NCBI GenBank assembly: GCA_976226885.1
Contig: OZ320315.1
Coordinates: 25,234,001-25,298,000, forward strand
Source of the DNA: Iphione sp. A-MEVVRFRX5
Taxonomy: Eukaryota
DNA: 64,000 nt
Direction of reading: 5' to 3'
The stretch's first letter is position 1. Every line of letters starts with the position of its first letter. This document shows, in pieces, positions 22,961 through 41,364 of the stretch. The translations under genes and the position numbers were made by a program. The notes under the pieces were generated by a model. The model had not been told where the DNA came from. It ran no database searches and saw only the letters and a list, made by a program, of their open reading frames with translations.

Positions 22961-24059
22961 GCCAAGCAAATCACCAGGCTGCTTCACTCTGTACTGAAGC
23001 ACTGCAAAGTAGTACAGGTGGTTACCAATCAAAGCTTTAAAGCATGCTGCCAATTGGAGAAAACTCTTCATCCTATATAGTTGGATGGCAGTGGCAACAG
23101 TTGCATGCTGCATTCTCAATCCATGGAGGTTGAGGTCAAGGTCCATGGGGGTGACTCTAGCAACCTTCAAGGCATCCGGATAGGAGCTATTGACCCATAT
23201 CCTCCCAAACAACCAGCTGAGGAAATCAAGGTTTCCCAACAATGCCAGTTTCAGGATCCATGGTGGAATGCCATCAATCCCTGAGGCTTTGTTGGTTTTT
23301 ACCTTGCTAACAAGGGGCCACAGCATCACAGGAGTGGGATCTGTTACAGCCAAGACCCCCCTAGCACCCACGAGATGGGTGCAATATTGGGTCGAGAAGC
23401 CGGGGGGGTGCAATATCGGGTCAACTAATCTTTCCACTGAGTCCACAAGGTGGTTGTTGAATTTGTGTGACAGTTTTGATAGATCCCCCCCTCACAGAGT
23501 CAGGGTCTATTGGGAGGACTGTATTAGTCCTGTCCTTCCCAACAGCATCATTTAGGACACCTCAAAGCTGTCTTGGGTCTTCTTTAGAATCTCTGATATG
23601 CTGATGCCAGTACAGGCACTTTTTTTAAATGAGGGTATTTTTATCCTTTACACTAGAAATTTGTAAATGCGCCTGTTATTCCAGTCAGGCATGCTCTTGT
23701 GCTCACGCATTTGGCATATCAAGGCCAGTTCCCCCTTGCAGATGGAGGAAAAGCAGTCCCAGGCCTTAGAGTGGTCGCCAACCATTGCAAATCCTTTGTC
23801 ATGCAGTTTGTCAAGTAGTTGTGGCATATCAACAAAATGCTATCGTCTTACCTGCACCTTTGTTCTAGAAAGGCCCTTCACTCCTTTCTTCAGGTAGAAG
23901 GCAACAGGCCAGCGGTAACTGACCAGCGAGTGCAAGATAGTGGCCTCAATGAGATTTTCACCTAAAAGCCAGATGTGATTAGTGACTTACAATCGTGCTG
24001 CCTTATACCATCTGCACCAGGTCAGAATCATTGCTCAGATTGGTTAACAATATAGCTAC
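22961..24059 (-). mobile_element. Decayed LINE ORF2 fragment (EN end, linker, RT start), split by the Gypsy insertion
   Basis: KVKTNKASGIDGIPPWILK...PDALKVARVTP in 22943-23446; endonuclease remnants continue at 36188-36600. Confidence 0.75.
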
Positions 24060-24347
24060 TGTAATTTAATGGCTGACTTCCTCACTTGGTGTAATCCAAC
24101 TAAGTCCAACTCGCTTAGTTACTCCACTATAATTCCAGTGATATTTTATCCAAGTCCTAACTCCAGGATAATTCTCTGTTAAATCTCCCACTTGGTAGAT
24201 CCAGCTATGTCTAGTGCTATCCTGTCTCAGTTCCTTCACTGTAGTCCCAGTGCGGTTACATCCAAGTGCCAACCCTAGGTAATCCAAGTGGGTTTGTTAC
24301 ATCCCCAAATCAACAAGGTCCACTAGTGAGGTCCAAGTGCAAACTGT

Positions 24348-24353
24348 TTTATT
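24348..24353 (-). terminator. AATAAA polyadenylation signal in the 3' LTR
   Basis: tttatt on +, about 20 nt downstream (minus sense) of the LTR TATA box. Confidence 0.6.
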
Positions 24354-24609
24354 GGCCACACAGGGCCCATATTTATAGTCAAACTCCTGGTCGCGTGATC
24401 AATACAATGTATCAGTCATGGAATAAAAAGGCTACAACATTCCAAAGACTTTTTTTTTTGTCTACCAATCATATTGCAGGTGCCTTGTCATCCAGGGTCC
24501 AAGGTGACCTTAAACATCCTATATGCCTGTGGTACCACAGGCCATTCAGCATAAATGACTGTGGTGCCCCAGGCAGTCCCAAGCTCACCCTCCAGTACAC
24601 ATGCACCAA

Positions 24610-25262
24610 GGTCTTAGAGTTCATCAAGTACGACATAAGTGACTGTGGTGTCACAGGCAACGTTACTACAACCACCTACACAACTGTGTGGCCACAGGCA
24701 ACATTACTACTAAGTCTTAGAGTTCATCAAGTGCAACACAAGTGGCTGTGGAACCACAGGCAGTATTGCTATTACGTCTTAGAGTTCGCTAAGTACAACA
24801 CGAGTGGCTGTGGTGCCACAGGCAACATTACTACTAAGTCTTAGAGTTCATCAAGTGCAACACAAGTGGCTGTGGAACCACAGGCAGTATTACTATAACG
24901 TCTTAGAGTTCGCTAAGTACAACACGAGTGGCTGTGGTGCCACAGGCGACATTACTACTAAGTCTTAGAGTTCATCAAGTGCAACACAAGTGGCTGTGGA
25001 ACCACAGGCAGTATTACTATTACGTCTTAGAGTTCGCTAAGTACAACACGAGTGGCTGTGGTGCAACAGGCGACATTACTACTAAGTCTTAGAGTTCATC
25101 AAGTGCAACACAAGTGGCTGTGGAACCACAGGCAGTATTACTATTACGTCTTAGAGTTTGCTAAGTACAACACGAGTGGCTGTGGTGCCACAGGCGACAT
25201 TACTACTAAGTCTTAGAGTTCATCTACCATAACATACGTGGCTGCGGCGCCACAGGTAACAT
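24610..25262. repeat. U3 tandem array: 62-bp monomers in 124-bp A/B dimers, each with a CTGTGG-NN-CCACAG palindrome
   Basis: Dimers start at 24714, 24838, 24962 and 25086, with a partial unit at 25210. Confidence 0.97.
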
Positions 25263-25274
25263 TGTCACATTACA

Positions 25275-25287
25275 CTCTCCCCACCTT
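25275..25287 (-). other. Polypurine tract
   Basis: AAGGTGGGGAGAG immediately upstream of the 3' LTR on the minus strand. Confidence 0.9.
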
Positions 25288-25349
25288 AAAAATAGTCTGC
25301 CGGGGGAAGTGAAAACCTGTTTCCCTGAGAAGTACATCCTGAGCCAATA

Positions 25350-26000
25350 TAAGCCTCCATAGAGGGTCACAGTTGATCTACTAACTCCTTGGATAAATAC
25401 TAGTAAATTTAGCAAAGCCTCCATAGGAGGTAATGGTCACCTAAGCAGCAAACTTTTCCTAAGTATACAAGTTAATCATTTAATCTGGCAAAGCCTCCCT
25501 AGGAGGTAGTGATATCACAATAACCCAAAAGATCACAGATTAACATCCCAGTAACTTTAAGAGCCTTACTCTTTTTGTGGGGGTACAGTCCCCCTTTAAT
25601 TTTACTGTTAACGTCCTCACTCTAACAACCCTTGAGTAGATGTGGGTAAATCTGACAAAGCCTCCGTAGGAGGTAGTAATTGTCTAGGTAACACAAGATA
25701 TCACAATAAACAAAAGATCACAGCTTAGCATTCCAGTAACTGTAACATCCCTGCTCTTTTTGTGGGGGTACAGTCCCCCTTTCATTTAACTGTTAACATC
25801 CTCTACCTGTCCTCCGAGTACACAGGTTAAAGCTATCTAATCTGGCCAAGCCTCCATAGGAGGTAGTGATTAACAAACAACATCAGTAACAAGGGTATAC
25901 TAGCGCAAAAACTCGTCCTATCACATGGCATACATCTCAACGATTTTTTTCTGGGGGTACAGTCCCCCTTTCAGTTATACTTATCCAACATCTTTTACAA
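25350..26000. repeat. Degenerate ~170-190-bp repeats in the 3' untranslated region
   Basis: aagcctccNtaggagg-type motif near 25351, 25415, 25491, 25658 and 25848; ggggtacagtccccc near 25579, 25766 and 25953. Confidence 0.75.
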
Positions 26001-26059
26001 TCCACCCTGGCAGTTCCTTGTCATTACTCTGGGTAGATTCCCAGCTCCCCCCCTTTTTC

Positions 26060-26503
26060 CTAAGCCGCGCGGGAATCATGGGTCATTGTGGTGTCAGGGG
26101 TCGGGCATGGGGCAGAGTTAACGTCAGTCGTCGGCACTCGGATCTGAACGGGAGGTGCCCCCATACATATGTCGTATATTGTTGGCTGTGTACTCTGCCG
26201 ATGGGCGCGGACCTCCTGAACCTCACGTTGCCACCCGGGATCGTAGATTCGCGTTTTACTGGGCCCCCATCGCATGGACTCTAGCACTCGTTCGGCGGCG
26301 TCGATGGTCTGGTTATGTGTTGAAAGTGTGGAGTCCAGTCGCCCCCAGTCTTGGGAGATAGGTAAAGACACCCCCGGCAGCAGCAGAGTAGGTCGTTGGC
26401 ACAGGGGCTCCAGAAGAGTGCCGGGTAGGGCCTCCTCATCCTCCGCTAGGCACAACACCCAGGCAAGGGCTGCCCCTGCCATCAGTCGCTGCGCCCCAGT
26501 CAT
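26060..26503 (-). CDS. Hypothetical accessory ORF, probably the detached C-terminus of the zinc-finger gene
   Basis: ATG lies 1 nt after the ZF ORF stop; the same frame extends upstream to 26650 with one TGA at 26527-26525. Confidence 0.45.
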   Translation of the reverse strand: MTGAQRLMAGAALAWVLCLAEDEEALPGTLLEPLCQRPTLLLPGVSLPISQDWGRLDSTLSTHNQTIDAAERVLESMRWGPSKTRIYDPGWQREVQEVRAHRQSTQPTIYDICMGAPPVQIRVPTTDVNSAPCPTPDTTMTHDSRAA

Positions 26504-26504
26504 G

Positions 26505-27614
26505 TCATGCCACCGACGTGGGGGTCAGGTAATGGTCGGCGGCAGACGAACAGCCGCTGGGACCACACTGGCCCTCATGGCCGGCTGGTGAGGTCGAATG
26601 AGACCGTCCAGGACGTCCCGCATCCTCCGGGACATGGGTTTCACGAACTCCTTGCATCAGGTGCCCTCCTGGCAGGGTTGGCGACGTGGGGGCATCTCCT
26701 CCCTCCCCGGGCAGGAGAAGAGGATCGGCTGTCGCGACTGCCCCCTCCGGCTCTGTGGCTGCGCGCAGCTGTGCCAACACAGCATCAAAGTCCTCCACCT
26801 CGGGTAGGCCGGCCCGCTCCTCTCCAGATGTGTCGCCCCCTACCGGTAGGTCTGCGGGAGGTGTATACGGTACCACTGGGAGGTCCAGCTCGGGAAGGGC
26901 TGGGTTTGCCTCTTCCGGTGCGCCCACCTCTGGTTCACGCTCAGGCTCGATTACTTGGTCTGCCTGCGCCTCGGGCCCCAATGGCTCAGGGCCTTCCCCG
27001 TTCAACCCTTGTGGCTCCAGAGGGGCCGGAGGAGCTGGAGCAGGGTCGGGGACTGGGGGATTTTGTACCTCTGGTGCAGCACGGCCGTCCCCCTCAAGAC
27101 CTCCTTCTGCTCCCTCCCGTGGGGGAGAGCCCAGTCGTACATATCGAGGGAGTGGGGGTGGAGCTGCTCGTCGGGGGCACGTGGCTAAGTAGCTCATGAT
27201 CTCCTCCTCCCCCAGGTACCCTCCTTCTTGTCGTCTCAGTTGGGCCTTACATAACGCCGCTGTAAGTTCGTCATCTGGCACAGCGATAGTCTGTCCCCCC
27301 AGTGGGGCTACATCATACAAGGGCCGGTACAATTTCTTGGTCAAACCTAGCGCTACTACCCAGGGGTGGTAGTTCCTCTGGTGGGTCACCCAGTAGTGCT
27401 CATCTGTGATGTAACTGGGGCACCAGAGGCACATCATGTCCCTCCCTCGTTTCCCGTGATGCTTCTCATCCAGGTGACGCTCAAAAGAGGGGCCCTTGAA
27501 GAAGGGACGCTTGCGGGGTAGGCATAGCTCGCACAGCTTTACCCCTGGGGGAAGGGGTCCCTCAGATTTCCAAGTAAGCGGGAGGCGGGGTGTTGTAATT
27601 TTCTCCCGCGGCAT
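26505..27614 (-). CDS. Accessory protein: two C2H2 zinc fingers plus Pro/Glu-rich acidic region (putative transcription factor)
   Basis: C28-x2-C31-x15-H47-x4-H52 and C62-x2-C65-x12-H78-x4-H83 (27533-27366); 369-aa open frame in element sense orientation. Confidence 0.78.
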   Translation of the reverse strand: MPREKITTPRLPLTWKSEGPLPPGVKLCELCLPRKRPFFKGPSFERHLDEKHHGKRGRDMMCLWCPSYITDEHYWVTHQRNYHPWVVALGLTKKLYRPLYDVAPLGGQTIAVPDDELTAALCKAQLRRQEGGYLGEEEIMSYLATCPRRAAPPPLPRYVRLGSPPREGAEGGLEGDGRAAPEVQNPPVPDPAPAPPAPLEPQGLNGEGPEPLGPEAQADQVIEPEREPEVGAPEEANPALPELDLPVVPYTPPADLPVGGDTSGEERAGLPEVEDFDAVLAQLRAATEPEGAVATADPLLLPGEGGDAPTSPTLPGGHLMQGVRETHVPEDAGRPGRSHSTSPAGHEGQCGPSGCSSAADHYLTPTSVA

Positions 27615-27689
27615 GGTAGGTCGTGTCGGTAACCGGTCAGTCTTGGCTCGGTCAGTCGTGGCTCGGTCGGTCGTTGGCCGTCCGCAGTC

Positions 27690-28590
27690 AACTGTGGGGT
27701 CGCAGAAGCACTCACCAGTCCGGGGCGGTGTGGCTGTGGGGGCACAGTCAATAATCGCCAGACTCGTTTGGTCGGTGTTAGAGCTAGTGTCCCCCCGCAG
27801 TGGTCAACTCCTATCTCTAGCCCAGTCGCTTAGCCCTCGGTGGTACCCCCTGCGGGCCCGCAGTCCAAAACAAAGTGTAGATGTCCCTGCGGGGTCACAG
27901 GCGTAATTACCAACCTGACTGTGGGGGCGCAGTTGAAGTCAGCGGCCGGCGTCCTCGTCGAAAATTTCAAGCGGTAGACCTCCCTGTGGCACCAAAACCG
28001 CGATAATTCCTCTCTCCTATGCTGCCTGACGACCTTTCTCGCCTTTCTATCTTCCTCTCTTCAACTGTACTTTCAGCCGGTGTTGGGGTTCTTGGCTTTT
28101 CCTCTCTTCACTGAATTACGGTAGAAGGGGTTCCCCAGAAACGAAAGCGAGGCTGGCGGATGTTTGGGTTGTCCGCTTCCGGGATTCCCCCCTTCTTGAC
28201 TGTGGGCCCCCAGTCACCGAGTCGTTTGTTGACTGTGGTACCACAGCCTCTGATTTCCTGCTTTTCTCCCATTTAACCCCCCTTTTAGAGGTTTACTCGG
28301 CCTCTCTCCCTACGAATTACGCTGAATCTGGGTAGAGATGTCCCCTCGGCCTGCGTCCCCGCAGTTCCGCTGTCGTAAGTTCCGTGTCGCTGCGGTTCCA
28401 CAGTCGTATCGCAATTACGCAGTTTCCCGCTCGACTGCGGCTCCCCAGTCAATTCCATCTGCTCGCTGTGGTTCCACAGTTGAATTGTCAATGTGATTAC
28501 GCAGTTTCCCACTCGACTGTGGTTCCCCAGTCGATTCCATCTGTTCGCTATATAAGGGCGTGCGATCGGCGGCTACCCGTCAGTCCGACA
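27690..28590. promoter_or_regulatory. Internal control region with 12 CTGYGG-NN-CCRCAG palindromes, ending in a + strand TATA box and Inr
   Basis: Sites with at most 1 mismatch at 27692, 27734, 27850, 27887, 27919, 28200, 28233, 28351, 28390, 28435, 28466 and 28517; TATATAA 28549-28555; TCAGT 28580-28584. Confidence 0.75.
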
Positions 28591-28614
28591 CTAGACCTCA
28601 GGCAGTACACATCA

Positions 28615-28748
28615 ATGGAACTACCAGCATACCTTGCAGGCCTCTCCCAGGGAGGGGCCTTTCTACCAGAAGACCAGGAGAGGTGCCCTCCTGTGGGAGA
28701 GGATTACTTCCCTGAAGAGCAGAAAGGTTATCCCCCCATGGAGGATAG
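28615..28748 (+). CDS. Antisense accessory gene, exon 1
   Basis: ATG 28615 is the first ATG after the TATA/Inr. AG/GTAGGC donor at 28749 is phase 2 and in frame with exon 2. Confidence 0.65.
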
Positions 28749-28870
28749 GTAGGCACTTACATGCAGCTAGGGGCCTTCTCCAGTTACCAATTGCCATGTT
28801 GGATTTCCTGAGGCTGGTTACTGATGTTCCTTTGGAGGTTCCAGGTGAGTTCCAGGTTTTTACAGTCACT

Positions 28871-28901
<31 letters not shown>

Positions 28902-28927
28902 CACCCTTCTCCTGTTCCTCTTTTCAG

Positions 28928-29627
28928 ATCTCAGCCCCCGGATCCGTATTTTCGTTTCATTGACGTGGGCACTCCTGGGCCTACCATAAGGGTGTACGGG
29001 TTGCACCCCATGTCCACCCATCCGCTGTACATTCCAGCTCCGGGCAACATCCGATTGTACGGCCCGGATCATTGGGTGGGCATCTCCGTGCAGCCGGTGA
29101 TCCAGCCAGTTCTTCCCCGCAGCGACGATCCTCTGTGGTCCCGCCAGGACTCGGTGTCCCCCGACCTCGGTTTGGGAGAGGTATCCAGCTACCTCGCCTC
29201 CCTCGACAAGGTCGAATCCAGCCACACTGATGAGGACGACTGGTCTCATTGTTCGATGACCTCCAGTCAGCTGGACCCCTGGCCCTCCTCGAGCTCTGAC
29301 GTCAGCGCCTCGCCCTCATATAGCTGTTCTAGCGGTGTGGCCTCGTCCACCGAGGTTGACTCTACGAGCACTACCTCCTCCGCCACCTGTCCTCGGTCGC
29401 CCTGCCCGGAGGACACGAGCTCGCCGGTGGACACGCCATCCCGCTCGCCTGCCCCATCCAGTTCTCCTGATGTGGGGCCAGTCCTCGGGCGGGCTTCCCT
29501 CTCCTCCTGGCCGGCCGATTTCCTGTCTTCGTGGTACCCCGACCTGCAGCCCGGGGACCTGGCATGGCATCCAATCCTAATCTCCGACGAGGACGAGGAT
29601 GAGGATGCCCCTCCCTCCTCTTCTTAA
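28928..29627 (+). CDS. Antisense accessory gene, exon 2 (Ser/Asp-rich protein ending in PILISDEDEDED)
   Basis: Branch-like CACTAAT 28867-28873, poly-T tract, TTTTCAG acceptor ending 28927; open to TAA 29627; ATTAAA at 29751-29756. Spliced product is 277 aa. Confidence 0.7.
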
Positions 29628-30518
29628 GTGGACTTTCCGCTCGACCATCTGTACATAGACTCATCCCGCGACCGTAACTTGTGTATATATGACTTTCATC
29701 GTCCGCCACTCGCAGTTGCTACCCACTTCGTTCCATGGTTGGTGATTTGAATTAAAATTTGTTCATAGTTCAACTGCCTCTCAGTCTTTCTTTTGTTCTA
29801 GCACGGCCCGCCCAGAGGACAAGGACCGCAGCTCGGTTTCCGTCGTCCCCCATCCCGAGTGCCTCGCTCCTTCCAGAGGAAAAGGACGGCAACTCGGCCA
29901 CCCCCTCATCCAGAGGACATGGACTGCAGCTTGGTCTTCTCTCCCGTCCAGAGGACACATACCGCAACTAGGCTTCTTTACTTCTTCTGCCTGCCGTAAT
30001 GTTTCCCGGAGGAATGATGCCGACATCATCCTTCGATCTCTCCGCGTCTCTTACACCGAACCGTTTCGAGCTCCACGGCTTCCTGGACGTTCTCTCCCTA
30101 CCCGTTCCACAAACTTTTTGCGTGCTCCAGGGTGTTCGTTTCCCTCGCCAGGCCTTTTGAGCAACTCCAGGAGGTCCGCCCTTCTCCATGAACTTTTGGG
30201 CCGGGTAAACCCCAGGATGTTCATCCTCCTCCAGGGAATTTCTGAGCGTGACATGCGCTTCCGGGCGTTCCCTAATCGCCCCACGGACTTTTTGAGTGCT
30301 ACCAGGGAGGCCTCCCCTCCCACAGGTCGTTGCCGGTTGATAAACCCTCAGGCCACCTGTGACGCCTCTGGTTGTTATTTCGAGCCTCAGTGGCTCCGGG
30401 CCGTCCACCGCTCCCCACGAACCATTTCGAGCGCAGCCAGGATGTTTGTCCTCCTATCTTCAGACTCATATTTGAGTCTCCAGGACACCCGTCTCGAACG
30501 TCTTCTTCGCCCATCTCC

Positions 30519-33269
30519 TTATTCCGGCTTCCTATACGGAGACCCCGCCACCGCCGTCTGGGGCGGAGAGCTCCGGGGTAATTGTTCCCCGCGATACAAC
30601 CGTAATCGATTCCGATGTACTACTCTCGGCCTCGCTTGTTTAGAGCGTTGCACAATCAGTCGTTCATCATCCAGAGCTCGGATAACTAGCCACGGCCCTG
30701 ACCAGGGGAAGTGAATCTTCGGGCTTCTCCCTTTTGGTGGCTGTGCCTCATGGAGCCATACCACCGCCCCCGCCTTCAAAGCTTCCCCCTTCATTCTCCG
30801 ATCATAAGCTCGGGCCTGAGATCGAGCCGCCGTCCTCAGGTTCTTCCGGACTCTACCGTATGCCTCTTGAAGTCGTCGCAACATTTCCCCTACTGGGTCA
30901 GGTAAGTCTTCCACCTCTGGGTTTTTCGACGGAAGCCCGTCCATCGCATGCACCGGAAGAGTAACCTCACGTCCGAACATCAGGTAGTTCGGGGTGTACC
31001 GGGTGCTAGCTTGTGGTGAAGCCCTATACGCCATCATGAGGAAAGGGAGTGCTGTGTCCCACTCCTCTTGGCTCTCGTGGCAATGTGCTTTGATCATCTT
31101 CCCCAAGGTCCGGAAGCTACGTTCAATGAACCCGTCGCTTTGCGGGTGTCGCGGGGTGGTCCTGGTCTTCTTGATGTGCAGATAGTCACAGAGGGCCGTG
31201 ATGATCTCGCTGCAGAAATTTGTTCCCTGGTCACTGTGCAGCTCGTGGAAACAACCATAGCGAGCGATTACCTCCTCGGCTAGGATCCGGGCGATCTTTG
31301 GGGCTTTCTGGTCTGGTAGGGGGAACGCCTCAAGCCACTTTGTGAAGTGATCCCCCACCATCAGGATGTAGCGGTTTCCTCGCGCAGTTAGTGGCAAGGG
31401 TCCGGCCACATCCATTGACCATCGTTCCATGGGTTCCCCCGACAGGTAAGTTTTCAGAGGCACCTGCGGCCGGAAAGGATCCCGGTTGAGCAGGGCACAG
31501 TGACAGTCTCTGCACCAGGCTGCGATGTTCCCTGTCATCCCCGGCCAGTAATAGGCGAGGGCTACCAGGTAGGTAGTTCGTTCGGCAGCTAGGTGGGCTC
31601 CCATCTGGCCAGCATGTACTTCCTTGAAGGCTTTTTCTCGAAGGGCGACTGGCAAGACCACCTGCAGCCGGGAAGGCTCCCCGCCAAGTCCTGTCCACTT
31701 CCTCTGCAGCAGACCTCCGCTCACGGTAAGTCGGCTCCACTGTCTCCAAAGGCTCTTCGTTGCAGCCGACGCTGGCGCCACCCACTCCCAGGCAGGCTGT
31801 TGGGGGTCCGATTCCATAGCTATAAGGATTGGCCCTACTTCCTCATCTTGGAGTTGGGCCATCCGTAGTTCCGGATGTCCAGTTCCTGTTGACTGGCTGC
31901 GAGTCACAGCTCGTACTTTTTCTGTCACTGCGTCTTCCGTTAGGTGTTTTTGTTTGCATTGCCTACAGGTTTTACGGGAGAGGGCGTCCGCATTTGCATT
32001 CAAGCGACCCGCTCGATGCTCCAGTTGGATGTTGTATTGTCCCACACGTTCCAGCCAACGGGCTAGCTGCCCCTCTGGGTCTTTAATACGGCACAGCCAA
32101 CTTACCGCCCCATTATCGGTCCGCACTGTGACTTCTTGTCCGTACAAATAAAAGTGGAAGTGTTTCAGGGCCGCCACCACAGCGAGCAGCTCTCTACGCA
32201 TCACGCAGTATCGTCGCTCTGTCTCGCTCAAGCTACGACTGTAGTAGGCCAGTACCACCTCTCGTTCCTCCTGCCTCTGGGCTAGTACAGCCCCAATGCC
32301 CACATTGCTGGCGTCGGTATCCAGGAAGTACCGCCCCTCTGGCTGTGGGTATCCCAGTATTGGGCTAGATGCTAGAGCCGCCTTCAGATCCCAAAATGCT
32401 GCCTCTTCCGGGTCTCCCCAGGTAAATCGCGTCTTAGTACCGGTCAACTTGTGCAGAGGAGCGGCCACATTGGCGAAGTGTGGCACATACCGGCGGTAGT
32501 AAGAACAGAGACCCAGGAAGGCTCGCACTTCTGTCGTGCAGGTCGGGGTCGGCCACTCTTCTATACTCTTCGTCTTGCTGGGATCGGTGGCCACCCCCTT
32601 CAGTGAGACGATGTGCCCCAGGAAGCCTATCTCTTGCAGGAACAGCTGACATTTAGAGGGCTTGAGTTTGAGCCCAGCCGCAGCTAGCCGTGTCAGCACC
32701 CGATCCAAACGAGCTATGGTTTCTTGGAAGGTCCTCCCAAAAACCAAAATGTCATCCAAGTACACTAAGCACTGTTCCCAGGTCAAGCCGCGCAACACTG
32801 TATCCATTAGTCGTTTGAAGGTTGCTGGGGTGTTAATCAGACCGAATGGCATTACCGTAAATTCATGCAACCCAACTGAGGTGGAGAACGCCGTTTTCTC
32901 CTGGTCTTCTGGGTGCATCCTGACTTGCCAGTAGCCAGACGCCAGGTCAAGTGAGCAAAAGTATTTGGCCCCCGCCAGGGTACTCAGGGAGTCATCGATC
33001 CTGGGCAAGGGGTAGCCGTCAACCTTCGTCTTTCCATTTAGTTTTCGATAGTTGACACAGAAGCGAGTGGTGCCGTCCTTCTTTTTTACCATCACCATGG
33101 GGCTAGACCAAGGACTGCTGCTTTCAACGATTACCCCCAGATCTTTCATCTCCTTAACTAGTTTCCGCTCTTCCTGTCTCTTGAAAAGGGGGAGTCTCCT
33201 CGGGGGTTGTTTTATAGGATGGCGGTCCTCAGTGAAAATGCGGTGCTGTACCACATCTGTGCGCCCCAA
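30519..33269 (-). CDS. pol: Gypsy pol: RT, RNase H, integrase
   Basis: YPLPRIDD, LDLASGYWQV, MPFGL, VYLDDIL; RNase H DTDAS, ELLAVV, TDNG, NADALSR; integrase HHCC, DVAG, HSDQG, HPQSDGFIER; WSGPW. Confidence 0.97.
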   Translation of the reverse strand: MGRTDVVQHRIFTEDRHPIKQPPRRLPLFKRQEERKLVKEMKDLGVIVESSSPWSSPMVMVKKKDGTTRFCVNYRKLNGKTKVDGYPLPRIDDSLSTLAGAKYFCSLDLASGYWQVRMHPEDQEKTAFSTSVGLHEFTVMPFGLINTPATFKRLMDTVLRGLTWEQCLVYLDDILVFGRTFQETIARLDRVLTRLAAAGLKLKPSKCQLFLQEIGFLGHIVSLKGVATDPSKTKSIEEWPTPTCTTEVRAFLGLCSYYRRYVPHFANVAAPLHKLTGTKTRFTWGDPEEAAFWDLKAALASSPILGYPQPEGRYFLDTDASNVGIGAVLAQRQEEREVVLAYYSRSLSETERRYCVMRRELLAVVAALKHFHFYLYGQEVTVRTDNGAVSWLCRIKDPEGQLARWLERVGQYNIQLEHRAGRLNANADALSRKTCRQCKQKHLTEDAVTEKVRAVTRSQSTGTGHPELRMAQLQDEEVGPILIAMESDPQQPAWEWVAPASAATKSLWRQWSRLTVSGGLLQRKWTGLGGEPSRLQVVLPVALREKAFKEVHAGQMGAHLAAERTTYLVALAYYWPGMTGNIAAWCRDCHCALLNRDPFRPQVPLKTYLSGEPMERWSMDVAGPLPLTARGNRYILMVGDHFTKWLEAFPLPDQKAPKIARILAEEVIARYGCFHELHSDQGTNFCSEIITALCDYLHIKKTRTTPRHPQSDGFIERSFRTLGKMIKAHCHESQEEWDTALPFLMMAYRASPQASTRYTPNYLMFGREVTLPVHAMDGLPSKNPEVEDLPDPVGEMLRRLQEAYGRVRKNLRTAARSQARAYDRRMKGEALKAGAVVWLHEAQPPKGRSPKIHFPWSGPWLVIRALDDERLIVQRSKQARPRVVHRNRLRLYRGEQLPRSSPPQTAVAGSPYRKPE

Positions 33270-33275
33270 GTCATC

Positions 33276-34112
33276 TCAGTCCCGGGCAAAAGTAAGGCTA
33301 TGTTTTCTTAGTAATCTTCTCAGTTGCCCCTGCTGTTCGGATGTAAGGGTCCCATCCGTAGGCTTCACCAACTCTTGGATGACATCCGCTACTGCCTTCC
33401 TGATTGCATACACACCTTTCTTGGGGCTCGTGGGGATTTCCTCCCAAGGTTGGGTAGGCACCCCCACAGCAATCTGTGTCCCCTGCCTCAGGAATATCTC
33501 TGTGTCGGTGGTATTCCACATGGGCAAGGTCGACTCAACAAGGCATCTCATCCCAACAACCCCCTGTCTCCACTGCGACTCTAATAGTCCTTCTACCATC
33601 AGGGGTGTCTCTCCATGGTGGTTAATGAGCACAGCTAGCCCTGCCCCAGCCGGTAATGTCACGTCATGGGCCACTCGTACCTCTGTCTCCTGTCTAGCCA
33701 CTCGGCAGCACCGATTCAGAGCTATCTCTTTTCTGGCAAGATCAATCACTGCGCGGTGTTGACACAGAAAGTCGCTTCCCAAGATCCCATCCTCTTCCAC
33801 CTCCGCTACTAGGAAGGAATGACTAAAGCTCTCCCCTGCTATCTCCAGTACACAGGTATGATGCCCTAAGGTAGGGATAAAATGTCCCCCCGCCCCAGTG
33901 ATACGTGTCGGGGACCCTTCTCCCTCCAGGCCAGGGACCACACAGGGGTTAACAATGGATACCTCAGCACCAGTGTCAATCAACAGTTCTACTGACCTTC
34001 CATCAAGGCTCACCTTCAGCCGTGGTCCCTGACCTGGTTCCATTGTAGTCCCCGTTAGTGTTATTCCAGTCGTACCATCCCGGCCTAGTTGGCCGACTGG
34101 GATCCGTTTCCC
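33276..34112 (-). CDS. Aspartic protease (reached by -1 frameshift); in frame with RT but separated by one TGA
   Basis: LLIDTGAEVS, GILGSDFL; frame is open from the slippery site at 34112; TGA at 33278-33276. Confidence 0.92.
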   Translation of the reverse strand, partial: GKRIPVGQLGRDGTTGITLTGTTMEPGQGPRLKVSLDGRSVELLIDTGAEVSIVNPCVVPGLEGEGSPTRITGAGGHFIPTLGHHTCVLEIAGESFSHSFLVAEVEEDGILGSDFLCQHRAVIDLARKEIALNRCCRVARQETEVRVAHDVTLPAGAGLAVLINHHGETPLMVEGLLESQWRQGVVGMRCLVESTLPMWNTTDTEIFLRQGTQIAVGVPTQPWEEIPTSPKKGVYAIRKAVADVIQELVKPTDGTLTSEQQGQLRRLLRKHSLTFARD

Positions 34113-34924
34113 TGCAACTCAGGACAGTCCCGTCGAAAATGGCCGTCCTGCCCGCACTGGAAGCATTTTGTGTAGCGTGGCTTCCTGTTCCGTACTTCCT
34201 CTCGGGCCTGCATCTCCTCTCGGATTTTCGCGAGCTCCTTGTTAAGTTCCTCCATAGGTTTTGTCCACGCCGGAGTTGAGGGGGCCTGTACTACCTGTAT
34301 CTTCTTAGCGACGAAGCGCTCTTGGGTCTCCACCACCTGTACAGCGGCATCCAAAGTTGTACACTTCGCCTCCAGGCACTTGAGATGAAGAGAATCGGCC
34401 AAAGATCGTTGAAAAGCGGCTACGGCTGCCAGCTCCCGGGTCTCCCCGGACACATCAGGGTACGCACTCCTCACCAGACGTCTCACTCGATCGGCCAGGT
34501 CGCGAACGTCCTCGTCCTTTTGCCTACGGATACTGGAGAGCTTCTGCATGGCCACCACTCGGTCACGTCGCCTGCCGAACCGTCGCTCCAATGCAGTGAC
34601 TCGTGACCCGTAATCCTGCTTATCCTCTGGCGGTAGATCCCCATAATACATTCGCGCAGGGCCAGTGAGTGACAGTGTTAATGCGGAACAGCGGGTATTC
34701 TCATTCCACTTGCAAGCGTCCGCCCACTCCGTGAATTGGCCTATCCAACTGTCCCAATCCACAGTCTTACCATCGAAGCGCTCTGGCTTCATGGCATTCA
34801 TTTTCAATGGCTGCTCAGGGGCCAGTTCAAATTGCTCACCTTCTTCCTCATTGCTGCCCGCTGGTGCTGGGCTAGGAACCCGAATCTGCACTTCGTCGTC
34901 CACTGCCACGTAGTGTGTAGCCAT
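34085..34924 (-). CDS. gag: Gypsy Gag
   Basis: PERFDG capsid-start motif, helical capsid region, CFQCGQDGHFRRDC knuckle. Confidence 0.96.
   Translation of the reverse strand: MATHYVAVDDEVQIRVPSPAPAGSNEEEGEQFELAPEQPLKMNAMKPERFDGKTVDWDSWIGQFTEWADACKWNENTRCSALTLSLTGPARMYYGDLPPEDKQDYGSRVTALERRFGRRRDRVVAMQKLSSIRRQKDEDVRDLADRVRRLVRSAYPDVSGETRELAAVAAFQRSLADSLHLKCLEAKCTTLDAAVQVVETQERFVAKKIQVVQAPSTPAWTKPMEELNKELAKIREEMQAREEVRNRKPRYTKCFQCGQDGHFRRDCPELQGNGSQSAN
34106..34112 (-). promoter_or_regulatory. -1 ribosomal frameshift slippery heptamer G GGA AAC
   Basis: In the gag frame; a -1 shift enters the open protease frame (23 codons to ATG 34043). A cggcc/ggccg stem follows. Confidence 0.85.
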
Positions 34925-34936
34925 ATTGTCAATGTT

Positions 34937-34955
34937 AATCCCACCGCTGCCACCA
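34937..34955 (-). other. Primer binding site, tRNA-Leu
   Basis: TGGTGGCAGCGGTGGGATT, 1 nt after the 5' LTR, is complementary to the 3' end of metazoan tRNA-Leu (AATCCCACCGCTGCCA-CCA). Confidence 0.93.
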
Positions 34956-34956
34956 G

Positions 34957-36187
34957 TGTAATTTAATGGCTGACTTCCTCACTTGGTGTAATCCATCTAA
35001 GGAAGTAATCCATCTAAGTCCAACTCGCTTAGTTACTCCACTATAATTCCAGTGATATTTTATCCAAGTCCTAACTCCAGGATAATTCTCTGTTAAATCT
35101 CCCACTTGGTAGATCCAGCTATGTCTAGTGCTATCCTGTCTCAGTTCCTTCACTGTAGTCCCAGTACGGTTACATCCAAGTGCCAACCCTAGGTAATCCA
35201 AGTGGGTTTGTTACATCCCCAAATCAACAAGGTCCACTAGTGAGGTCCAAGTGCAAACTGTTTTATTGGCCACACAGGGCCCATATTTATAGTCAAACTC
35301 CTGGTCGCGTGATCAATACAATGTATCAGTCATGGAATAAAAAGGCTACAACATTCCAAAGACTTTTTTTTTGTCTACCAATCATATTGCAGGTGCCTTG
35401 TCATCCAGGGTCCAAGGTGACCTTAAACATCCTATATGCCTGTGGTACCACAGGCCATTCAGCATAAATGACTGTGGTGCCCCAGGCAGTCCCAAGCTCA
35501 CCCTCCAGTACACATGCACCAAGGTCTTAGAGTTCAACAAGTACGACATAAGTGACTGTGGTGTCACAGGCAACGTTACTACTACCACCTACACAACTGT
35601 GTGGCCACAGGCAACATTACTACTAAGTCTTAGAGTTCATCAAGTGCAACACAAGTGGCTGTGGAACCACAGGCAGTATTGCTATTATGTCTTAGAGTTC
35701 GCTAAGTACAACACGAGTGGCTGTGGTGCCACAGGCGACATTACTACTAAGTCTTAGAGTTCATCAAGTGCAACACAAGTGGCTGTGGAACCACAGGCAG
35801 TATTACTATAATGTCTTAGAGTTCGCTAAGTACAACACGAGTGGCTGTGGTGCCACAGGCGACATTACTACTAAGTCTTAGAGTTCATCAAGTGCAACAC
35901 AAGTGGCTGTGGAACCACAGGCAGTATTACTATTACGTCTTAGAGTTCGCTAAGTACAACACGAGTGGCTGTGGTGCCACAGGCGACATTACTACTAAGT
36001 CTTAGAGTTCATCAAGTGCAACACAAGTGGCTGTGGAACCACAGGCACTATTACTATTACGTCTTAGAGTTCGCTAAGTACAACACGAGTGGCTGTGGTG
36101 CCACAGGCGACATTACTACTAAGTCTTAGAGTTCATCAACCATAACATACGTGGCTGCGGCGCCACAGGTAACATTGTCACATTACA
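34957..36187 (-). repeat. 5' LTR (same palindrome array in U3 at about 35520-36175)
   Basis: Partner of 24060-25274; followed by the PBS. Confidence 0.98.
35286..35291 (-). promoter_or_regulatory. LTR TATA box (TATAAA)
   Basis: tttata on +, downstream (minus sense) of the palindrome array and upstream of AATAAA at 35267-35262. Confidence 0.7.
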
Positions 36188-36600
36188 CTACCCCGGCCCT
36201 AGAGCCAAGTCGAAGTAAAAATCACCCAGAACTATGAGGTCTTCTCTATGTCTCTGGCTATATCAGTTCAGGCAGCTGCTAGGGCAGTGAGAGAGTCCAT
36301 TACAGGATCATAAGGTGGAAAGTATACCAAAATAACTGATATGGGTTGCCTCATCCCTCTTTTGAGAGTGACTCTGAGAATCTCAGTCAATGAGCTCAGA
36401 CTAGTTAGGTCCAATTTTGCTACCACCTTCAACTCTGGTTTGTGGTAGATAACAAGGCCACCACCACTCTAATCCTGTCTTTTCTAATTACACAGTAACC
36501 ACTGATCTCAATCTAATTATCAGAATGACTGGATGTAAGCCAGGTTTCAGTAAGGCAACAGATAGCAACATCATTTGCTGCAAGATAATATGCCAACTCG
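36188..36600 (-). mobile_element. Decayed LINE endonuclease remnant (continues left of 24059)
   Basis: QPISVILVY, PPYD and VLGDFYFD fragments. Confidence 0.55.
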
Positions 36601-38565: not shown

Positions 38566-41364
38566 ATGACCATACGGCTAGCCCATGTTAATGCTCCCAG
38601 TCTTCTTAAACATCTTGCTGAAGTTGAATTACTGCTATCTAACAATGCGTTTGATATAATAATAATAACAGAGACATGGTTAAGTCCATGTGTCCCAGAC
38701 TCTGCCATAGCAATTGACCAATATACCTCATATAGGAAAGATAGGGACAGTACTGTTTTCAAATCGGGTGGTGGAGTCCTTATGTATATCAAAAATGATC
38801 TGACTGAGTACATATCACAATATGATACTAAACTTAACAAAGATGGTGGTCATTACTTAATAGCCCTACAGTTTAAGGACCAAAAGAACTGTTTTCTGAT
38901 AATTGGCTGTTACAGACCACCTCGAGGATCCTTAGCTATATGCCTTGATGACGTACTATCTGCTGTGCAAGTGAAAAGAACTCCAAAAATTAAGGATTTT
39001 ATCTTAATAGGTGATTTAAATGTGGATATGAAGTCCGCCACATCGATAGGTAGAAATAGTACAGATGATTTTTTGATAGAGACCCACAGCACTCAGTACG
39101 TCAAGGAAGCAACCCGTATTACCAGTTTGAGTAGTACAACGATTGATGTAATCATAAGTAACAAAGGGGAAAAGATCCACAACGTACGAGTTCTGCCCAC
39201 TACATTTAGCGACCACTGTACCATTGAGTGTAGTGTTAGGACCTCATACAGGGATAGAAGGGTAGTTAATAGAAGATGGGTGAGGAAATGCCTGAGGCAG
39301 GACAAGCCGGAGTTCTTCATTGAAGCAAAAAAGGGCATAGGAGATATTTGCAGATATAACCTGAACCTAACTCTTAAATGGAAATACATTCAAGCTTTCC
39401 TTGAAAATCTATTTAACATGCATTACCCAAAAAGAGAAGTAAGAGTCAGAGGGAATATAAATCCCTGGATGACTGATGAGTGTCTTAATGCAATCAGAGC
39501 ACGTAATGCTATGTTTAAGATTGCCAGGGGCAGTGGTCGGCCTGAGGATTGGTCTAATTTCAGGAAACAGAAGGCGCAGGTAAACAAGTTATTGAGGGTG
39601 GCTAAGCGTAATTATATCATTAATGAAGCAATAGCACATCGTAAGGATGGACGTAAGTACTGGGCCCACCTGAAGAACTCACTCGGACTGGGTAGAAGAA
39701 ATGCTGACACAATTGTCCTAAACCATGACGGAAGTCAGGTGTTGGGTAGGGAAGTACCGGAGTTAATCAATACCTTCTTTTTGGGGATAGGCCAGAAGAT
39801 TGCAGCCATAACTAGGAAATATAATCCTGTACCAATCCCTACCGTGGACATAGGTCATGAGTTACAGTCGTTCGTAATAACAGATGAAGATGTTATAAAG
39901 GTATTAAAGGTGATCAACATCACAAAAAAATCCCAGATAGGTGATCTACCAACCTGGGTAGTAAAGAGAATTTTGATAGACAGTCATACCTTATGTGCTG
40001 ACTTATTTAGGTAGAGTGTTGAGACATGTTGTATCCCTGCTGAGTGGAAGCTGACATATGTCAAGCCATTGTGGAAGGGAGGTAAGCGTGACAGTATTGA
40101 AAACTATAGGCCAATCAGCCTGGTGAGTGTTATAAGCAAATGTCTAGAAAAGGTGATATTTGAGAAAATTATGGCATTTCTAGTAGACACAGACCGACTT
40201 AGTCCAAAACAACATGGTTTCAGGGCCTCATGCTCCACCGAGTCGGCCATAGCAGAGGTCACAAATAACCTACATCGGTCTTTGAACAAGGGGTCCTATG
40301 TGGCAGGACTATTTATAGATTTCAGGAAGGCTTTCGACTCGGTGGATCATGGGGTACTGACCAAAAAGATGAGTAATTTGGGTATTAGGGGTAAATGTTT
40401 AAGTTGGCTGAATGCGTATCTAACTGGTCGGGAACAAATAGAGTGTTGTAATAATGAGCAATCAGGAAAAGGTTTGATAACCTGTGGGGTACCTCAGGGG
40501 TCCGTCTTAGGACCCCTGATGTTCCTCATGTTCATAAATGATTCGCCAAACATCATAACGGAAGGGCTCTGTACTCTATATGCCGACGATGTTGCAATTG
40601 TCATAGAGGATAATTCCGTCCCAAGTCTAATTGAAAAGATACAACGAGTTGGTCAAAAACTGTGGACATGGTGTCTACAATCGAAAATGATGATAAATTA
40701 TGCCAAGACAAAATGTGTTGCATTTACCTATGGAAGGAAACCTTTTTTAGATGCTGGGTTGACAATAAGTTTGTCTCATCAAGAAATTGAAGTAGTAAGT
40801 GAAGTCAAATATCTAGGGATATGGCTAGATTACAAACTATCCATGACTACTACAAACATCAGCACTCTAAAGAAGGTTTATCCCAAGTATAACTATTTTG
40901 TGAAAATTAGGAAATATTTATCGACAATTGATGCAATACATCTTGCAAGGTCAATGATACAACCTGGTACTGAATATGCAACTATCGTGAACACTAATGT
41001 CAACTCCAGGTCATTTGTAAAATTGATGAGAGTAAGAAAGTGTATAGTAAATGCTGCCTTTGGATGGAGAAATTACACAATGGATGACATAAAAAAGGAT
41101 TATATAACAAGAAGAAACTGTCGGCTCTTGATCCTAGGATATGACAAGGCTAAATGGTTACAGAGAGCTGCGTATACGCGGCAACGAAACCGGAAACATA
41201 TTGAAGTACCCAGGCCTAAAAGAGAGGGATACCGTAGATCCATTGAGTATCAGTGCTCCATCTTATGGCAGACATTAAGTGATCAGAAAAGAAAGTTGAA
41301 AAGAAAGTTTTCAAGGACACTGTCCATGGTCTTGGTCGAAATTATCGTCTGTCATTTAAGGTAG
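38566..41364 (+). pseudogene. LINE ORF2 (APE endonuclease and RT) with one in-frame stop at 40012-40014
   Basis: HVNAPSL, ITETWL, GGGVLMY, YRPP, GDLN, SDH; NYRPISL, QHGFR, DFRKAFD, GVPQGSVLGP, YADD, YLGIWLD. Confidence 0.97.

What the first reader, a model, noticed from the sequence alone, without database searches (positions are those of the whole stretch)
24527..36187. Gypsy element with an apparent self-encoded transactivator circuit: C2H2 protein plus one palindrome repeated in both LTRs and an internal promoter
Seen: CTGYGG-NN-CCRCAG occurs 13 times in each LTR, all upstream of the LTR TATA box (U3). It occurs 12 more times (at most 1 mismatch) in 27692-28530, where the sites are not part of the 62-bp repeat, so the motif is kept independently of its flanks. 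That region lies between the head-to-head starts of a two-finger C2H2 gene (27614, -) with an acidic/Pro-rich tail and an antisense gene (28615, +). Established: two C2H2 fingers read about 6 bp, the half-site length here, and foamy virus Tas acts on both the LTR and an internal promoter. Inference: a dimer of the element's own ZF protein binds these sites to form a feedback switch, giving complex-retrovirus-style regulation in an invertebrate Gypsy element. Alternative: many sites contain TGTGGT/AACCACA and could be host Runx sites, although several lack the Runx T.
Basis: partly seen in the sequence, partly recalled or inferred. Interest (0 to 1): 0.9.

Follow-up and report, generated by a model that had tools for sequence, protein, structure and literature searches.

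The report
Gypsy retrotransposon with zinc-finger accessory gene
A young 12-kb Gypsy-type retrotransposon carries, besides gag and pol, a lineage-conserved zinc-finger gene and an antisense unit whose promoter reuses the palindromic motif of the LTR enhancer, which hints at self-regulation but does not show it.

Summary
Window 24060-36187 is a minus-strand Ty3/Gypsy element with 1.2-kb LTRs about 99% alike, TG..CA ends and a 4-bp target duplication. CTGTGGNNCCACAG occurs 13 times per LTR at up to 1 mismatch, always upstream of the LTR TATA. The 12 internal sites (27692-28530) need up to 2 mismatches (6 at up to 1), against 0.06 expected. They share only the motif with the LTR.

New here: the "ZF gene" is a conserved third gene (ORF3) of this Gypsy lineage. 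It has tandem C2H2 fingers, an acidic linker and a novel C-terminal domain. It lies after pol in five relatives, one from a pearl oyster. The joint finger profile hits CTCF fingers at 1e-15.

- No relative has the palindrome, the internal cluster or the antisense unit.
- In this copy ORF3 is split between frames.
- The only recognisable internal core promoter faces the antisense, intron-bearing unit.
- Half-sites follow TGYGG, the Runt-domain core.

One trans-factor probably couples the LTR and internal promoters. A host factor is somewhat more likely than the element's own protein. The feedback switch remains untested.

The parts
24056..24059 (.). Target-site duplication CTAC, left copy (right copy at 36188-36191)
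   Evidence: Read directly.
24060..25274 (-). 3' LTR in element sense (1215 bp), TG..CA ends
   Evidence: Self-BLAST: 11 mismatches and 2 gaps against the other LTR. TATA-like box at 24377-24369 on the minus strand.
34957..36187 (-). 5' LTR in element sense (1231 bp)
   Evidence: TATA-like box at 35291-35283 on the minus strand.
24527..25255 (.). U3 array of 13 palindromes CTGTGGNNCCACAG; 10 lie in a 62/124-bp tandem repeat (twin array at 35440-36168)
34940..34955 (-). Primer-binding-site-like stretch that begins with TGG, 1 nt after the 5' LTR
   Evidence: Read. No tRNA gene in the window to match it.
25275..25287 (-). Polypurine tract abutting the 3' LTR
   Evidence: Read.
34085..34924 (-). 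gag (279 aa) with a CCHC knuckle; no break seen
   Evidence: Pfam zf-CCHC 4.7e-06 and Retrotrans_gag. 29-37% identical to the gag of relatives.
30519..34043 (-). pol: protease (33750-34028), RT (32607-33089), RNase H (32034-32420), integrase (31143-31652). One frame of 1175 codons with one in-frame stop and no frameshift
   Evidence: Pfam and frame count. Best relative is 53% identical. The pol frame overlaps the end of gag by 34 nt in another frame, as at a frameshift junction.
26060..27614 (-). ORF3, the lineage's accessory gene: tandem C2H2 fingers (27366-27533), acidic P/E-rich linker, then a conserved C-terminal domain. In this copy the finger part and the C-terminal domain are in different frames (at least one frame change, possibly one further lesion)
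   Evidence: for the fingers. for the C-terminal domain. Codon usage of the finger part and of the C-terminal part matches gag/pol. The finger frame's length was reached by 0 of 1000 shuffles.
27692..28530 (.). Internal cluster of 12 degenerate palindromes (left half CTGYGG in 12 of 12)
28549..28584 (+). TATA box plus TCAGT initiator-like core promoter that faces the antisense unit
   Evidence: The only such composite in 64 kb, 0.06 expected. Initiator consensus from PMC10290830.
28615..29627 (+). Antisense unit: ATG at 28615, exon 1 to 28748, GT..AG intron 28749-28927 holding a T29 tract, exon 2 from 28928 to 29627. The frames are compatible across the junction. ATTAAA at 29751-29756
   Evidence: Read by eye; no splice predictor was available. 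Exon 2 has no homologue and no Pfam hit. The open length is only marginal against shuffles (p about 0.05). The exons were not joined.
25330..26010 (-). 3' untranslated repeats (about 185-bp period) with small inverted repeats
   Evidence: RNA fold z-score -0.36.

Best explanation
Window 24060-36187 is a recently inserted, nearly complete Ty3/Gypsy LTR retrotransposon on the minus strand. Its U3 carries a tandemly amplified enhancer array of 13 copies of a 14-bp palindrome made of two inverted CTGYGG halves.

The element belongs to a lineage that also occurs in the pearl oyster Pinctada imbricata and in several unnamed assemblies. That lineage has a conserved third gene, ORF3, after pol. ORF3 consists of two N-terminal C2H2 zinc fingers, an acidic low-complexity linker and a C-terminal domain of unknown fold.

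Peculiar to this element is a 2.9-kb module between pol and ORF3. It holds an antisense, intron-bearing transcription unit with its own TATA plus initiator. Upstream of that promoter are 12 degenerate copies of the LTR palindrome, and the cluster ends 80 bp from the ORF3 start.

Inferred mechanism: the palindrome is the binding site of one trans-acting factor. That factor switches on the LTR (sense) promoter and the internal antisense, or possibly bidirectional, promoter in the same cells. An antisense intron survives retrotransposition, which explains how the unit can be carried.

The factor is more likely a host protein that reads a TGYGG core (Runt-domain type) than the element's own ORF3 protein, but the sequence cannot decide this.

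Shown: anatomy, motif enrichment and ORF3 conservation. Inferred: promoter activity, the shared factor and its identity.
For: - Element anatomy.
- Motif enrichment: 32 hits against 0.2 expected in the window; 12 internal hits against 0.06 expected. TGYGG density is 20 per kb in the LTR and the internal region, against 3-5 per kb elsewhere. No flank similarity between LTR and internal sites.
- Core promoter: the TATA plus TCAGT composite is unique in 64 kb and starts 19 bp after the last site.
- Antisense unit: donor, T29 tract, acceptor, frame-compatible junction and ATTAAA, read.
- ORF3 conservation: double CCHH on the sense strand after pol in 5 of 8 relatives, with all 8 zinc ligands invariant. 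The five-sequence profile hits CTCF fingers at 1.4e-15. Pfam zf-Di19 matches 4 of 5 members. The relatives-only profile against the window fingers gives E=0.0045. The shared C-terminal domain is seen.
- Host-factor leaning: the only variation allowed in the left half is T/C, which is the TGYGG degeneracy of Runx1 (PMC2952845). The sites are asymmetric. Relatives keep ORF3 without any palindrome array.
Against: - Only one copy of this element could be seen. The host genome is not in the collections, so selection on the motif, the module and the antisense frame cannot be measured.
- The antisense reading frame is barely longer than chance, has no homologue and its codon usage does not stand out. 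The unit may be non-coding.
- The two TGYGG cores are 2 bp apart, not the 4 bp shown for dimeric Runx1 (PMC2952845). Only 5 of 24 internal half-sites have the preferred T after the core. CAG at columns 12-14 is kept in 11-12 of 12 sites, which a monomeric Runt core does not explain.
- No transcription data were available.
Confidence: 0.55

Rival explanations
1. The element's own ORF3 zinc-finger protein binds the palindromes, as a dimer, in the LTR U3 and in the internal promoter. It activates both through its acidic tail, giving a self-encoded feedback circuit like a complex retrovirus.
For: - ORF3 is a real, conserved tandem C2H2 gene of the lineage with a basic finger region and an acidic tail. 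The pearl-oyster ORF3 has the same layout.
- The best structural matches are DNA-binding fingers such as CTCF, ZBTB and TFIIIA. Di19-type fingers belong to transcription factors (PMC13299491).
- The cluster ends 80 bp upstream of the ORF3 ATG, and palindromes work in both directions.
- Foamy-virus Tas acts on both the LTR and an internal promoter (PMC8670036).
Against: - No binding evidence of any kind.
- Five relatives keep ORF3 yet have no palindrome array, no repeated 6+6 inverted repeat in the LTR and no internal cluster. The conserved role of ORF3 therefore does not need such sites.
- No TATA or initiator was seen on the ORF3 side.
- Site asymmetry argues against a symmetric dimer.
- By the usual contact positions, finger 2 carries acidic or small residues in most members (read; inference).
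- The window's own fingers hit no Pfam model, and the only model had pLDDT 32.8.
- E3-ligase fingers (KCMF1, RNF125, ZFP91) match as well, so the fingers need not read DNA.
- ORF3 is split in this copy.
Confidence: 0.17
2. The internal cluster is a relic without present function. It could be a captured host promoter with its small gene, or an old inverted piece of a U3, and it resembles the LTR array by common descent or by chance.
For: - The module is absent from all relatives seen.
- Residual flank similarity among internal sites shows growth by local duplication (families D7-D9).
- The same palindrome turns up in unrelated satellites.
- The antisense frame is weakly supported.
Against: - Flanks have diverged beyond detection from the LTR while the motif is kept.
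- The left half is intact in 12 of 12 sites.
- The cluster ends 19 bp before a well-formed core promoter.
- There are no terminal repeats or duplication marks of a nested insertion.
- The element moved as one 12.1-kb unit (TSD and matching LTRs).
Confidence: 0.13
3. The clustered sites act on chromatin rather than as an enhancer. They would be an insulator or anti-silencing array bound by a host protein, as with the twelve Su(Hw) sites of Drosophila gypsy (my own knowledge, not checked here).
For: About a dozen degenerate sites lie within 0.84 kb of an internal, transcribed part of the element. The number and layout recall that case.
Against: The same sites also form the U3 array directly upstream of the LTR TATA, and they sit directly upstream of a core promoter. 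That is the usual place of activator sites. Nothing here tests boundary activity.
Confidence: 0.07

Closest known systems
Foamy-virus Tas with LTR and internal promoter (PMC8670036, PMC4929722)
   Same: An accessory gene lies downstream of pol. An internal promoter region lies upstream of it. The same cis-sites occur in U3 and in the internal region.
   Different: No homology to Tas: no named hit in Pfam, PDB or the protein searches. The recognisable internal core promoter faces the opposite strand. Binding and activation are unknown. The host is an invertebrate and the element has no env.
Antisense additional ORFs between pol and the 3' LTR of plant Gypsy elements (Grande gene23, RIRE2, Retand; PMC7264820, PMC11963269)
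   Same: An antisense unit lies between pol and the 3' LTR with its own promoter. It is an orphan protein with no database relatives. The region from pol to the LTR is long.
   Different: The host is an animal. The unit carries an intron. Its promoter reuses the LTR enhancer motif. It lies head to head with a sense accessory gene.
Diverse ORF3 genes of bdelloid rotifer LTR retrotransposons (PMC5408684)
   Same: A lineage-specific third ORF after pol in a metazoan LTR element, other than env.
   Different: The rotifer ORF3 types are env-like, GDSL lipase, DEDDy exonuclease, coiled-coil or transmembrane proteins. None is a tandem C2H2 protein.
Runx1/CBF sites, including the palindromic GM-CSF enhancer element (PMC2952845)
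   Same: The half-site core is TGYGG with T or C at the third base. The arrangement is an inverted repeat. Repeated cores in a retroelement enhancer are a classic setting (my own knowledge).
   Different: The cores are 2 bp apart here against 4 bp in the paper. The preferred T after the core is often missing. Conserved flanking C and CAG are not part of the Runx core.
N-terminal C2H2 fingers of R2 non-LTR retrotransposon proteins (PDB 9nl2, 9dou)
   Same: A retroelement-encoded pair of C2H2 fingers. This is a weak profile match (E=0.02 with three sequences).
   Different: Those fingers are part of the RT protein and read the target site. Here they head a separate gene of an LTR element.
HTLV antisense gene expressed from an antisense promoter (as cited in PMC7264820)
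   Same: A spliced antisense unit at the 3' side of a retroelement.
   Different: That promoter lies in the 3' LTR and the product is a bZIP protein. Here the promoter is internal and the product, if any, is an acidic S/P-rich orphan.

Membership tests
Ty3/Gypsy LTR retrotransposon (Metaviridae) | Two LTRs with TG..CA ends flanked by a short target-site duplication | tested here: met
   LTRs of 1215 and 1231 bp with 11 mismatches; 4-bp CTAC duplication.
Ty3/Gypsy LTR retrotransposon (Metaviridae) | Domain order gag(CCHC) - protease - RT - RNase H - integrase | tested here: met
   Pfam hits in that order. The nearest proteins are named transposon 412, Ty3-I or K02A2.6-like.
Ty3/Gypsy LTR retrotransposon (Metaviridae) | Primer-binding site after the 5' LTR and polypurine tract before the 3' LTR | tested here: met
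   Read directly. The primer tRNA was not identified.
Errantivirus-type (env-bearing) Gypsy element | An envelope glycoprotein gene after pol | tested here: not met
   The gene after pol is ORF3 with zinc fingers. There are no env-type Pfam hits in any frame-open piece.
C2H2 zinc finger (tandem pair) | Two C-x2-C ... H-x3-5-H ligand sets with the hydrophobic core positions | tested here: met
   C-x2-C-x15-H-x4-H and C-x2-C-x12-H-x4-H. 0 of 20000 shuffles give two. All 8 ligands are invariant in 5 elements.
C2H2 zinc finger (tandem pair) | Significant match to a curated C2H2 model or to solved fingers | tested here: inconclusive
   The window protein alone has no Pfam or PDB hit. The profile with four relatives hits CTCF at 1.4e-15. 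Four of 5 members hit zf-Di19 or zf-C2H2_4. The relatives-only profile against the window gives E=0.0045.
C2H2 zinc finger (tandem pair) | Beta-beta-alpha fold | tested here: inconclusive
   The single-sequence model had pLDDT 32.8.
Complex-retrovirus type transactivator circuit (foamy Tas / internal promoter) | Response elements shared by LTR U3 and an internal promoter | tested here: met
   The same palindrome is clustered in both. This is sequence evidence only.
Complex-retrovirus type transactivator circuit (foamy Tas / internal promoter) | The internal promoter drives the transactivator gene | tested here: inconclusive
   The cluster ends 80 bp upstream of ORF3, but the only TATA plus initiator faces the other strand.
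Complex-retrovirus type transactivator circuit (foamy Tas / internal promoter) | The element's protein binds the elements and activates transcription | not testable with these tools
   No binding or expression data.
Complex-retrovirus type transactivator circuit (foamy Tas / internal promoter) | Homology to known retroviral transactivators | tested here: not met
   No such named hit in Pfam, PDB or the two protein libraries.
Runt-domain (Runx) binding site | Core TGYGG | tested here: met
   22 of 26 LTR half-sites and 16 of 24 internal half-sites. Core definition from PMC2952845.
Runt-domain (Runx) binding site | For dimeric binding, inverted cores 4 bp apart; preferred T after the core | tested here: not met
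   The cores are 2 bp apart. T follows the core in 12 of 26 LTR half-sites and 5 of 24 internal half-sites.
Runt-domain (Runx) binding site | Occupancy by the host's Runt protein | not testable with these tools
Antisense additional ORF of LTR retrotransposons | Antisense unit between pol and the 3' LTR with its own promoter, present in most copies of the family | tested here: inconclusive
   Position and core promoter are met. Presence in other copies could not be tested because only one copy was seen.

The most novel reading that the evidence does not exclude
A metazoan Gypsy lineage carries its own tandem-C2H2 regulator (ORF3). In this element ORF3 has been wired into a retrovirus-like circuit: its binding sites were amplified in U3 and seeded in a bidirectional internal promoter that drives ORF3 one way and a spliced antisense gene the other. 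This would be complex-retrovirus-style self-regulation evolved independently in an invertebrate retrotransposon.
Probability: 0.15. Interest if true: 0.85.

Novelty: new variant of a known kind. Interest (0 to 1): 0.55.

Why it matters
LTR retrotransposons are usually seen as gag-pol machines that depend on host transcription factors. Self-encoded transcriptional control is a hallmark of complex retroviruses.

A conserved zinc-finger accessory gene in an animal Gypsy lineage is a concrete candidate for an element-encoded nucleic-acid-binding regulator, targeting factor or host-defence antagonist. With the terms I used I found no description of such a gene.

The element in this window adds a rare animal example of an intron-bearing antisense unit inside an LTR element, with a promoter that shares its enhancer motif with the LTR. 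This gives a testable case of coupled sense and antisense control.

Even if the factor is a host Runt-type protein, the case shows how an element copies one host input onto two promoters.

Tried and rejected
**Homologue and structure searches**
- Homologues of the zinc-finger frame: word-index search, exhaustive search of 1.84 billion representatives with the first 160 residues, PDB, Pfam at E up to 10 and a metagenome scan. All were empty.
- Antisense exon 2: no homologue.
- Exact look-up of 15 window proteins: none is in the collection. Neither the host nor other copies could be reached, and there is no other copy in the window.
- The single-sequence structure model was useless (pLDDT 32.8), so no fold search was run.

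**Motif and repeat checks**
- A pattern scan of metagenomes for paired palindromes found five unrelated satellites and no element proteins. I judged these chance hits among tandem repeats.
- I looked for an LTR motif re-used internally in relatives. There was none; the L001 signal was three single 9-11-mers amplified by a tandem repeat.

**Ideas considered and dropped**
- A structured RNA in the 3' repeats: z-score -0.36. No Rfam family.
- A nested insertion or captured poly(A) tail to explain the 2.9-kb module. No terminal repeats were found, and no poly(A) signal precedes the A29 run on the minus strand.
- Troyka-type element: its termini are CG..CG with a 3-bp duplication (PMC12440569), and this element does not fit.

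- The joined two-exon antisense product was not built or searched. The exons were searched apart.

- I wrote them before I recognised pol and ORF3 as interrupted genes, and they bracket the breaks.
- Consensus lines printed by the alignment tools were not used.

Full report
**1. The element**

Self-comparison shows two direct repeats, 24060-25274 and 34957-36187. They are 1215 and 1231 bp long and differ by 11 mismatches and 2 gaps. Both start with TG and end with CA, and they are flanked by the 4-bp duplication CTAC.

All retroelement genes read on the minus strand. They are gag with a CCHC knuckle, then protease, RT, RNase H and integrase (Pfam). The element therefore runs from 36187 down to 24060.

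A stretch beginning with TGG follows the 5' LTR after one base. A purine run abuts the 3' LTR.

Breaks counted:
- gag: none seen.
- pol: one frame of 1175 codons with one in-frame stop and no frameshift.
- gag/pol junction: the pol frame overlaps the end of gag by 34 nt in another frame, as at a normal frameshift junction.

The nearest pol in 5.8 billion proteins is only 53% identical. None of 15 proteins of the window is in the collection by exact match. The host and further copies are therefore out of reach, and the window holds no second copy. Named relatives come from arachnids, insects and a bivalve, so an invertebrate host is likely but not shown.

**2. The motif**

CTGTGGNNCCACAG at up to 1 mismatch gives 32 hits in 64 kb against 0.20 expected. 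That is 13 in each LTR and 6 in 27734-28530. At up to 2 mismatches the internal count is 12, spanning exactly 27692-28530. Three more lie elsewhere in the element and one in the 52 kb outside. Simulation of the internal kilobase gives 0.06.

In element orientation all LTR sites lie 150-880 bp upstream of the LTR TATA (24377-24369 and its twin), that is, in U3.

Ten of the 13 LTR sites belong to a 62/124-bp tandem array. Inside that array the motif varies less than the rest (pairwise difference 0.037 against 0.174), but the column test is not significant (p=0.18). The LTR count mostly reflects amplification of one unit.

The stronger evidence is the internal cluster:
- Sensitive BLAST finds only 14-25 bp of similarity with the LTR, centred on the sites.
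- An 82-bp local duplication accounts for two sites, and weaker flank similarity among others shows old local duplications.
- Column counts show the plus-strand left half C-T-G-Y-G-G intact in 12 of 12 sites (T 8, C 4). All 9 other mismatches fall in the right half (two-sided p=0.004).
- TGYGG density is 20 per kb in the LTR and in the internal region, against 3-5 per kb elsewhere.

**3. The internal region**

On the plus strand, TATATAAG lies 19 bp after the last site and is followed 23 bp later by TCAGT. This composite occurs once in the window, with 0.06 expected. TCAGTT is the Drosophila initiator (PMC10290830).

An ATG follows at 28615. Reading by eye:
- a donor AG|GTAGGC ends a first exon at 28748;
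- a run of 29 T and a pyrimidine tract end in CAG at 28927;
- the frame of exon 1 continues exactly into the long open frame from 28928 to the stop at 29627;
- ATTAAA lies at 29751-29756.

No splice predictor was available. I searched the exons apart and did not build the joined product.

Support for coding is weak:
- the open stretch is only marginal against shuffles (p about 0.05);
- codon usage does not stand out;
- there is no homologue or domain.

The product would be an acidic S/P/D-rich protein. An intron can persist only in the antisense orientation of a retroelement, so the layout is coherent with a real transcription unit, coding or not.

On the ORF3 side I saw no TATA or initiator, only a 15-bp tandem repeat.

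**4. The zinc-finger gene**

The minus-strand frame from 27614 stays open for about 370 codons, a length reached by 0 of 1000 shuffles. Its first 160 codons use codons like gag and pol.

It holds C-x2-C-x15-H-x4-H and C-x2-C-x12-H-x4-H motifs; 0 of 20000 shuffles give two. The N-terminus is basic (pI 9.6) and the tail is acidic and P/G/A/E-rich (pI 4.05).

On its own this protein hits nothing:
- Pfam at E up to 10;
- PDB;
- the word-index search;
- 1.84 billion representatives;
- metagenomes.

The single-sequence model had pLDDT 32.8.

**5. Relatives change the picture**

I fetched eight related elements through their pol proteins. Five have a long region after pol: L001, L007, L008, L009 and L013 (Pinctada imbricata, GCA_033119305.1). 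In each of the five, the sense strand after pol encodes a pair of CCHH motifs 27-30 residues apart at the start of one ORF of 433-921 codons. No such motif occurs in any other frame or strand there. The three compact relatives (L010, L011, L012) have the 3' LTR 35-73 bp after pol and no such gene.

Finger evidence:
- Aligned with the window's fingers, all eight zinc ligands are invariant.
- The five-sequence profile hits CTCF fingers at 1.4e-15, and many classic DNA-binding fingers, and also KCMF1.
- Four of five members hit Pfam zf-Di19 (best 3.2e-07) and zf-C2H2_4.
- A profile of the relatives alone matches the window's fingers at E=0.0045.

The same ORFs share a C-terminal domain of about 150 residues with no Pfam or PDB relative. 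Its profile also finds L001 (1.4e-4). It finds the window too, but in a frame different from that of the fingers. Only profile columns 57-109 of 180 are matched there (hhalign 0.0011, hmmsearch 4.5e-4).

In this copy it is broken by at least one frame change and possibly one further lesion.

I found no description of such a gene with the terms I searched. Known animal ORF3 types are different (PMC5408684).

**6. What the relatives say about the circuit**

In the relatives ORF3 follows pol after 28-1390 bp. None has anything similar to the window's 2.9-kb module or antisense frame.

Their LTRs (0.7-6.6 kb) often carry tandem arrays. However:
- the palindrome is absent (0-1 hits at up to 1 mismatch in 10-21 kb);
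- no 6+6 inverted repeat recurs in any of their LTRs;
- no internal region re-uses an LTR motif.

The conserved role of ORF3 therefore does not depend on palindrome arrays.

**7. Which factor**

Runx1 reads the core TGYGG. Both TGTGG and TGCGG bind well. It can form a dimeric complex on inverted cores 4 bp apart (PMC2952845).

Here the T/C wobble is the only change tolerated in the strict half-site, which fits. The cores are 2 bp apart, which does not fit that dimer. The preferred T after the core is present in 12 of 26 LTR half-sites and 5 of 24 internal half-sites. The conserved outer C and CAG are unexplained.

For ORF3, the fingers are of a DNA-binding superfamily, but they also resemble E3-ligase fingers. 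The usual contact positions of finger 2 are acidic or small in most members (read; an inference from the general recognition rules). I rate a host factor somewhat above the element's own protein. Neither is shown.

**8. Verdict**

The thing is a new variant of a known kind, an LTR retrotransposon with sense and antisense additional ORFs (PMC7264820, PMC11963269). It has two unusual points. One is a conserved tandem-C2H2 ORF3 in an animal Gypsy lineage. The other is an internal promoter that shares the U3 motif.

The comparison with foamy-virus Tas and its internal promoter (PMC8670036) is an analogy of layout, not of homology.

**9. Limits and slips**

- The joined antisense product was not made.
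- I recalled a few short consensus strings and one textbook finger helix from memory while reasoning.
- I left them as they are and give no places here.

Noticed in passing
window 25330-26010: The element's 3' untranslated region is built of repeats of about 185 bp. They carry small inverted repeats: CCTCC-N3-GGAGG five times and GGGGG-N6-CCCCC three times. The latter resembles a 3-mismatch version of the palindrome. As RNA the region folds no better than shuffles (z=-0.36).
   Followed up: partly
window 29807-29976: Four direct repeats of 34-38 nt lie just beyond the antisense unit's ATTAAA.
   Followed up: no
window 27634-27678: A 15-bp tandem repeat (2.9 copies) lies between the ORF3 ATG and the first palindrome. 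On the plus strand it contains TCAGTC twice, like the initiator of the antisense promoter.
   Followed up: no
window 28873-28901: A run of 29 T (A29 on the element's sense strand) lies inside the proposed antisense intron. No poly(A) signal precedes it on the sense strand, so it does not look like a captured mRNA tail.
   Followed up: partly
window 38566-41364, 51664-53351, 49103-50029, 19155-19847: Neighbours of the element: a LINE-like pair of ORFs (endonuclease plus RT), a second split RT, an ORF with a NADAR domain and an ORF with a GNAT acetyltransferase domain. The window is rich in transposable elements.
   Followed up: partly
L008 999-7641 and 15833-22475; L009 1190-7244 and 16208-22264: Two relatives have very long LTRs of 6.0-6.6 kb, 99.95-100% identical, with 126-bp and 144-bp tandem arrays of 10-12 copies.
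   Followed up: partly
L003 725-1775; L005 21-304: The same 14-bp palindrome sits in every unit of two unrelated satellites in metagenome contigs (38-bp and 30-bp units). No retroelement proteins are nearby.
   Followed up: partly
L013 12663-14837 (Pinctada imbricata, GCA_033119305.1): The pearl-oyster relative has an intact ORF3 of about 700 codons that fills the whole space from pol to the 3' LTR. It has fingers, a long S/P/E/D-rich middle and the C-terminal domain. The element lies inside an annotated cytochrome P450 gene range on the other strand.
   Followed up: partly
L001 8343-9058: The U3 of the closest relative carries 13 copies of a direct-repeat heptamer (GGRACGA), mostly within 200 bp of the LTR start and upstream of its TATA. 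It is a different enhancer-like motif from the one in the window.
   Followed up: partly
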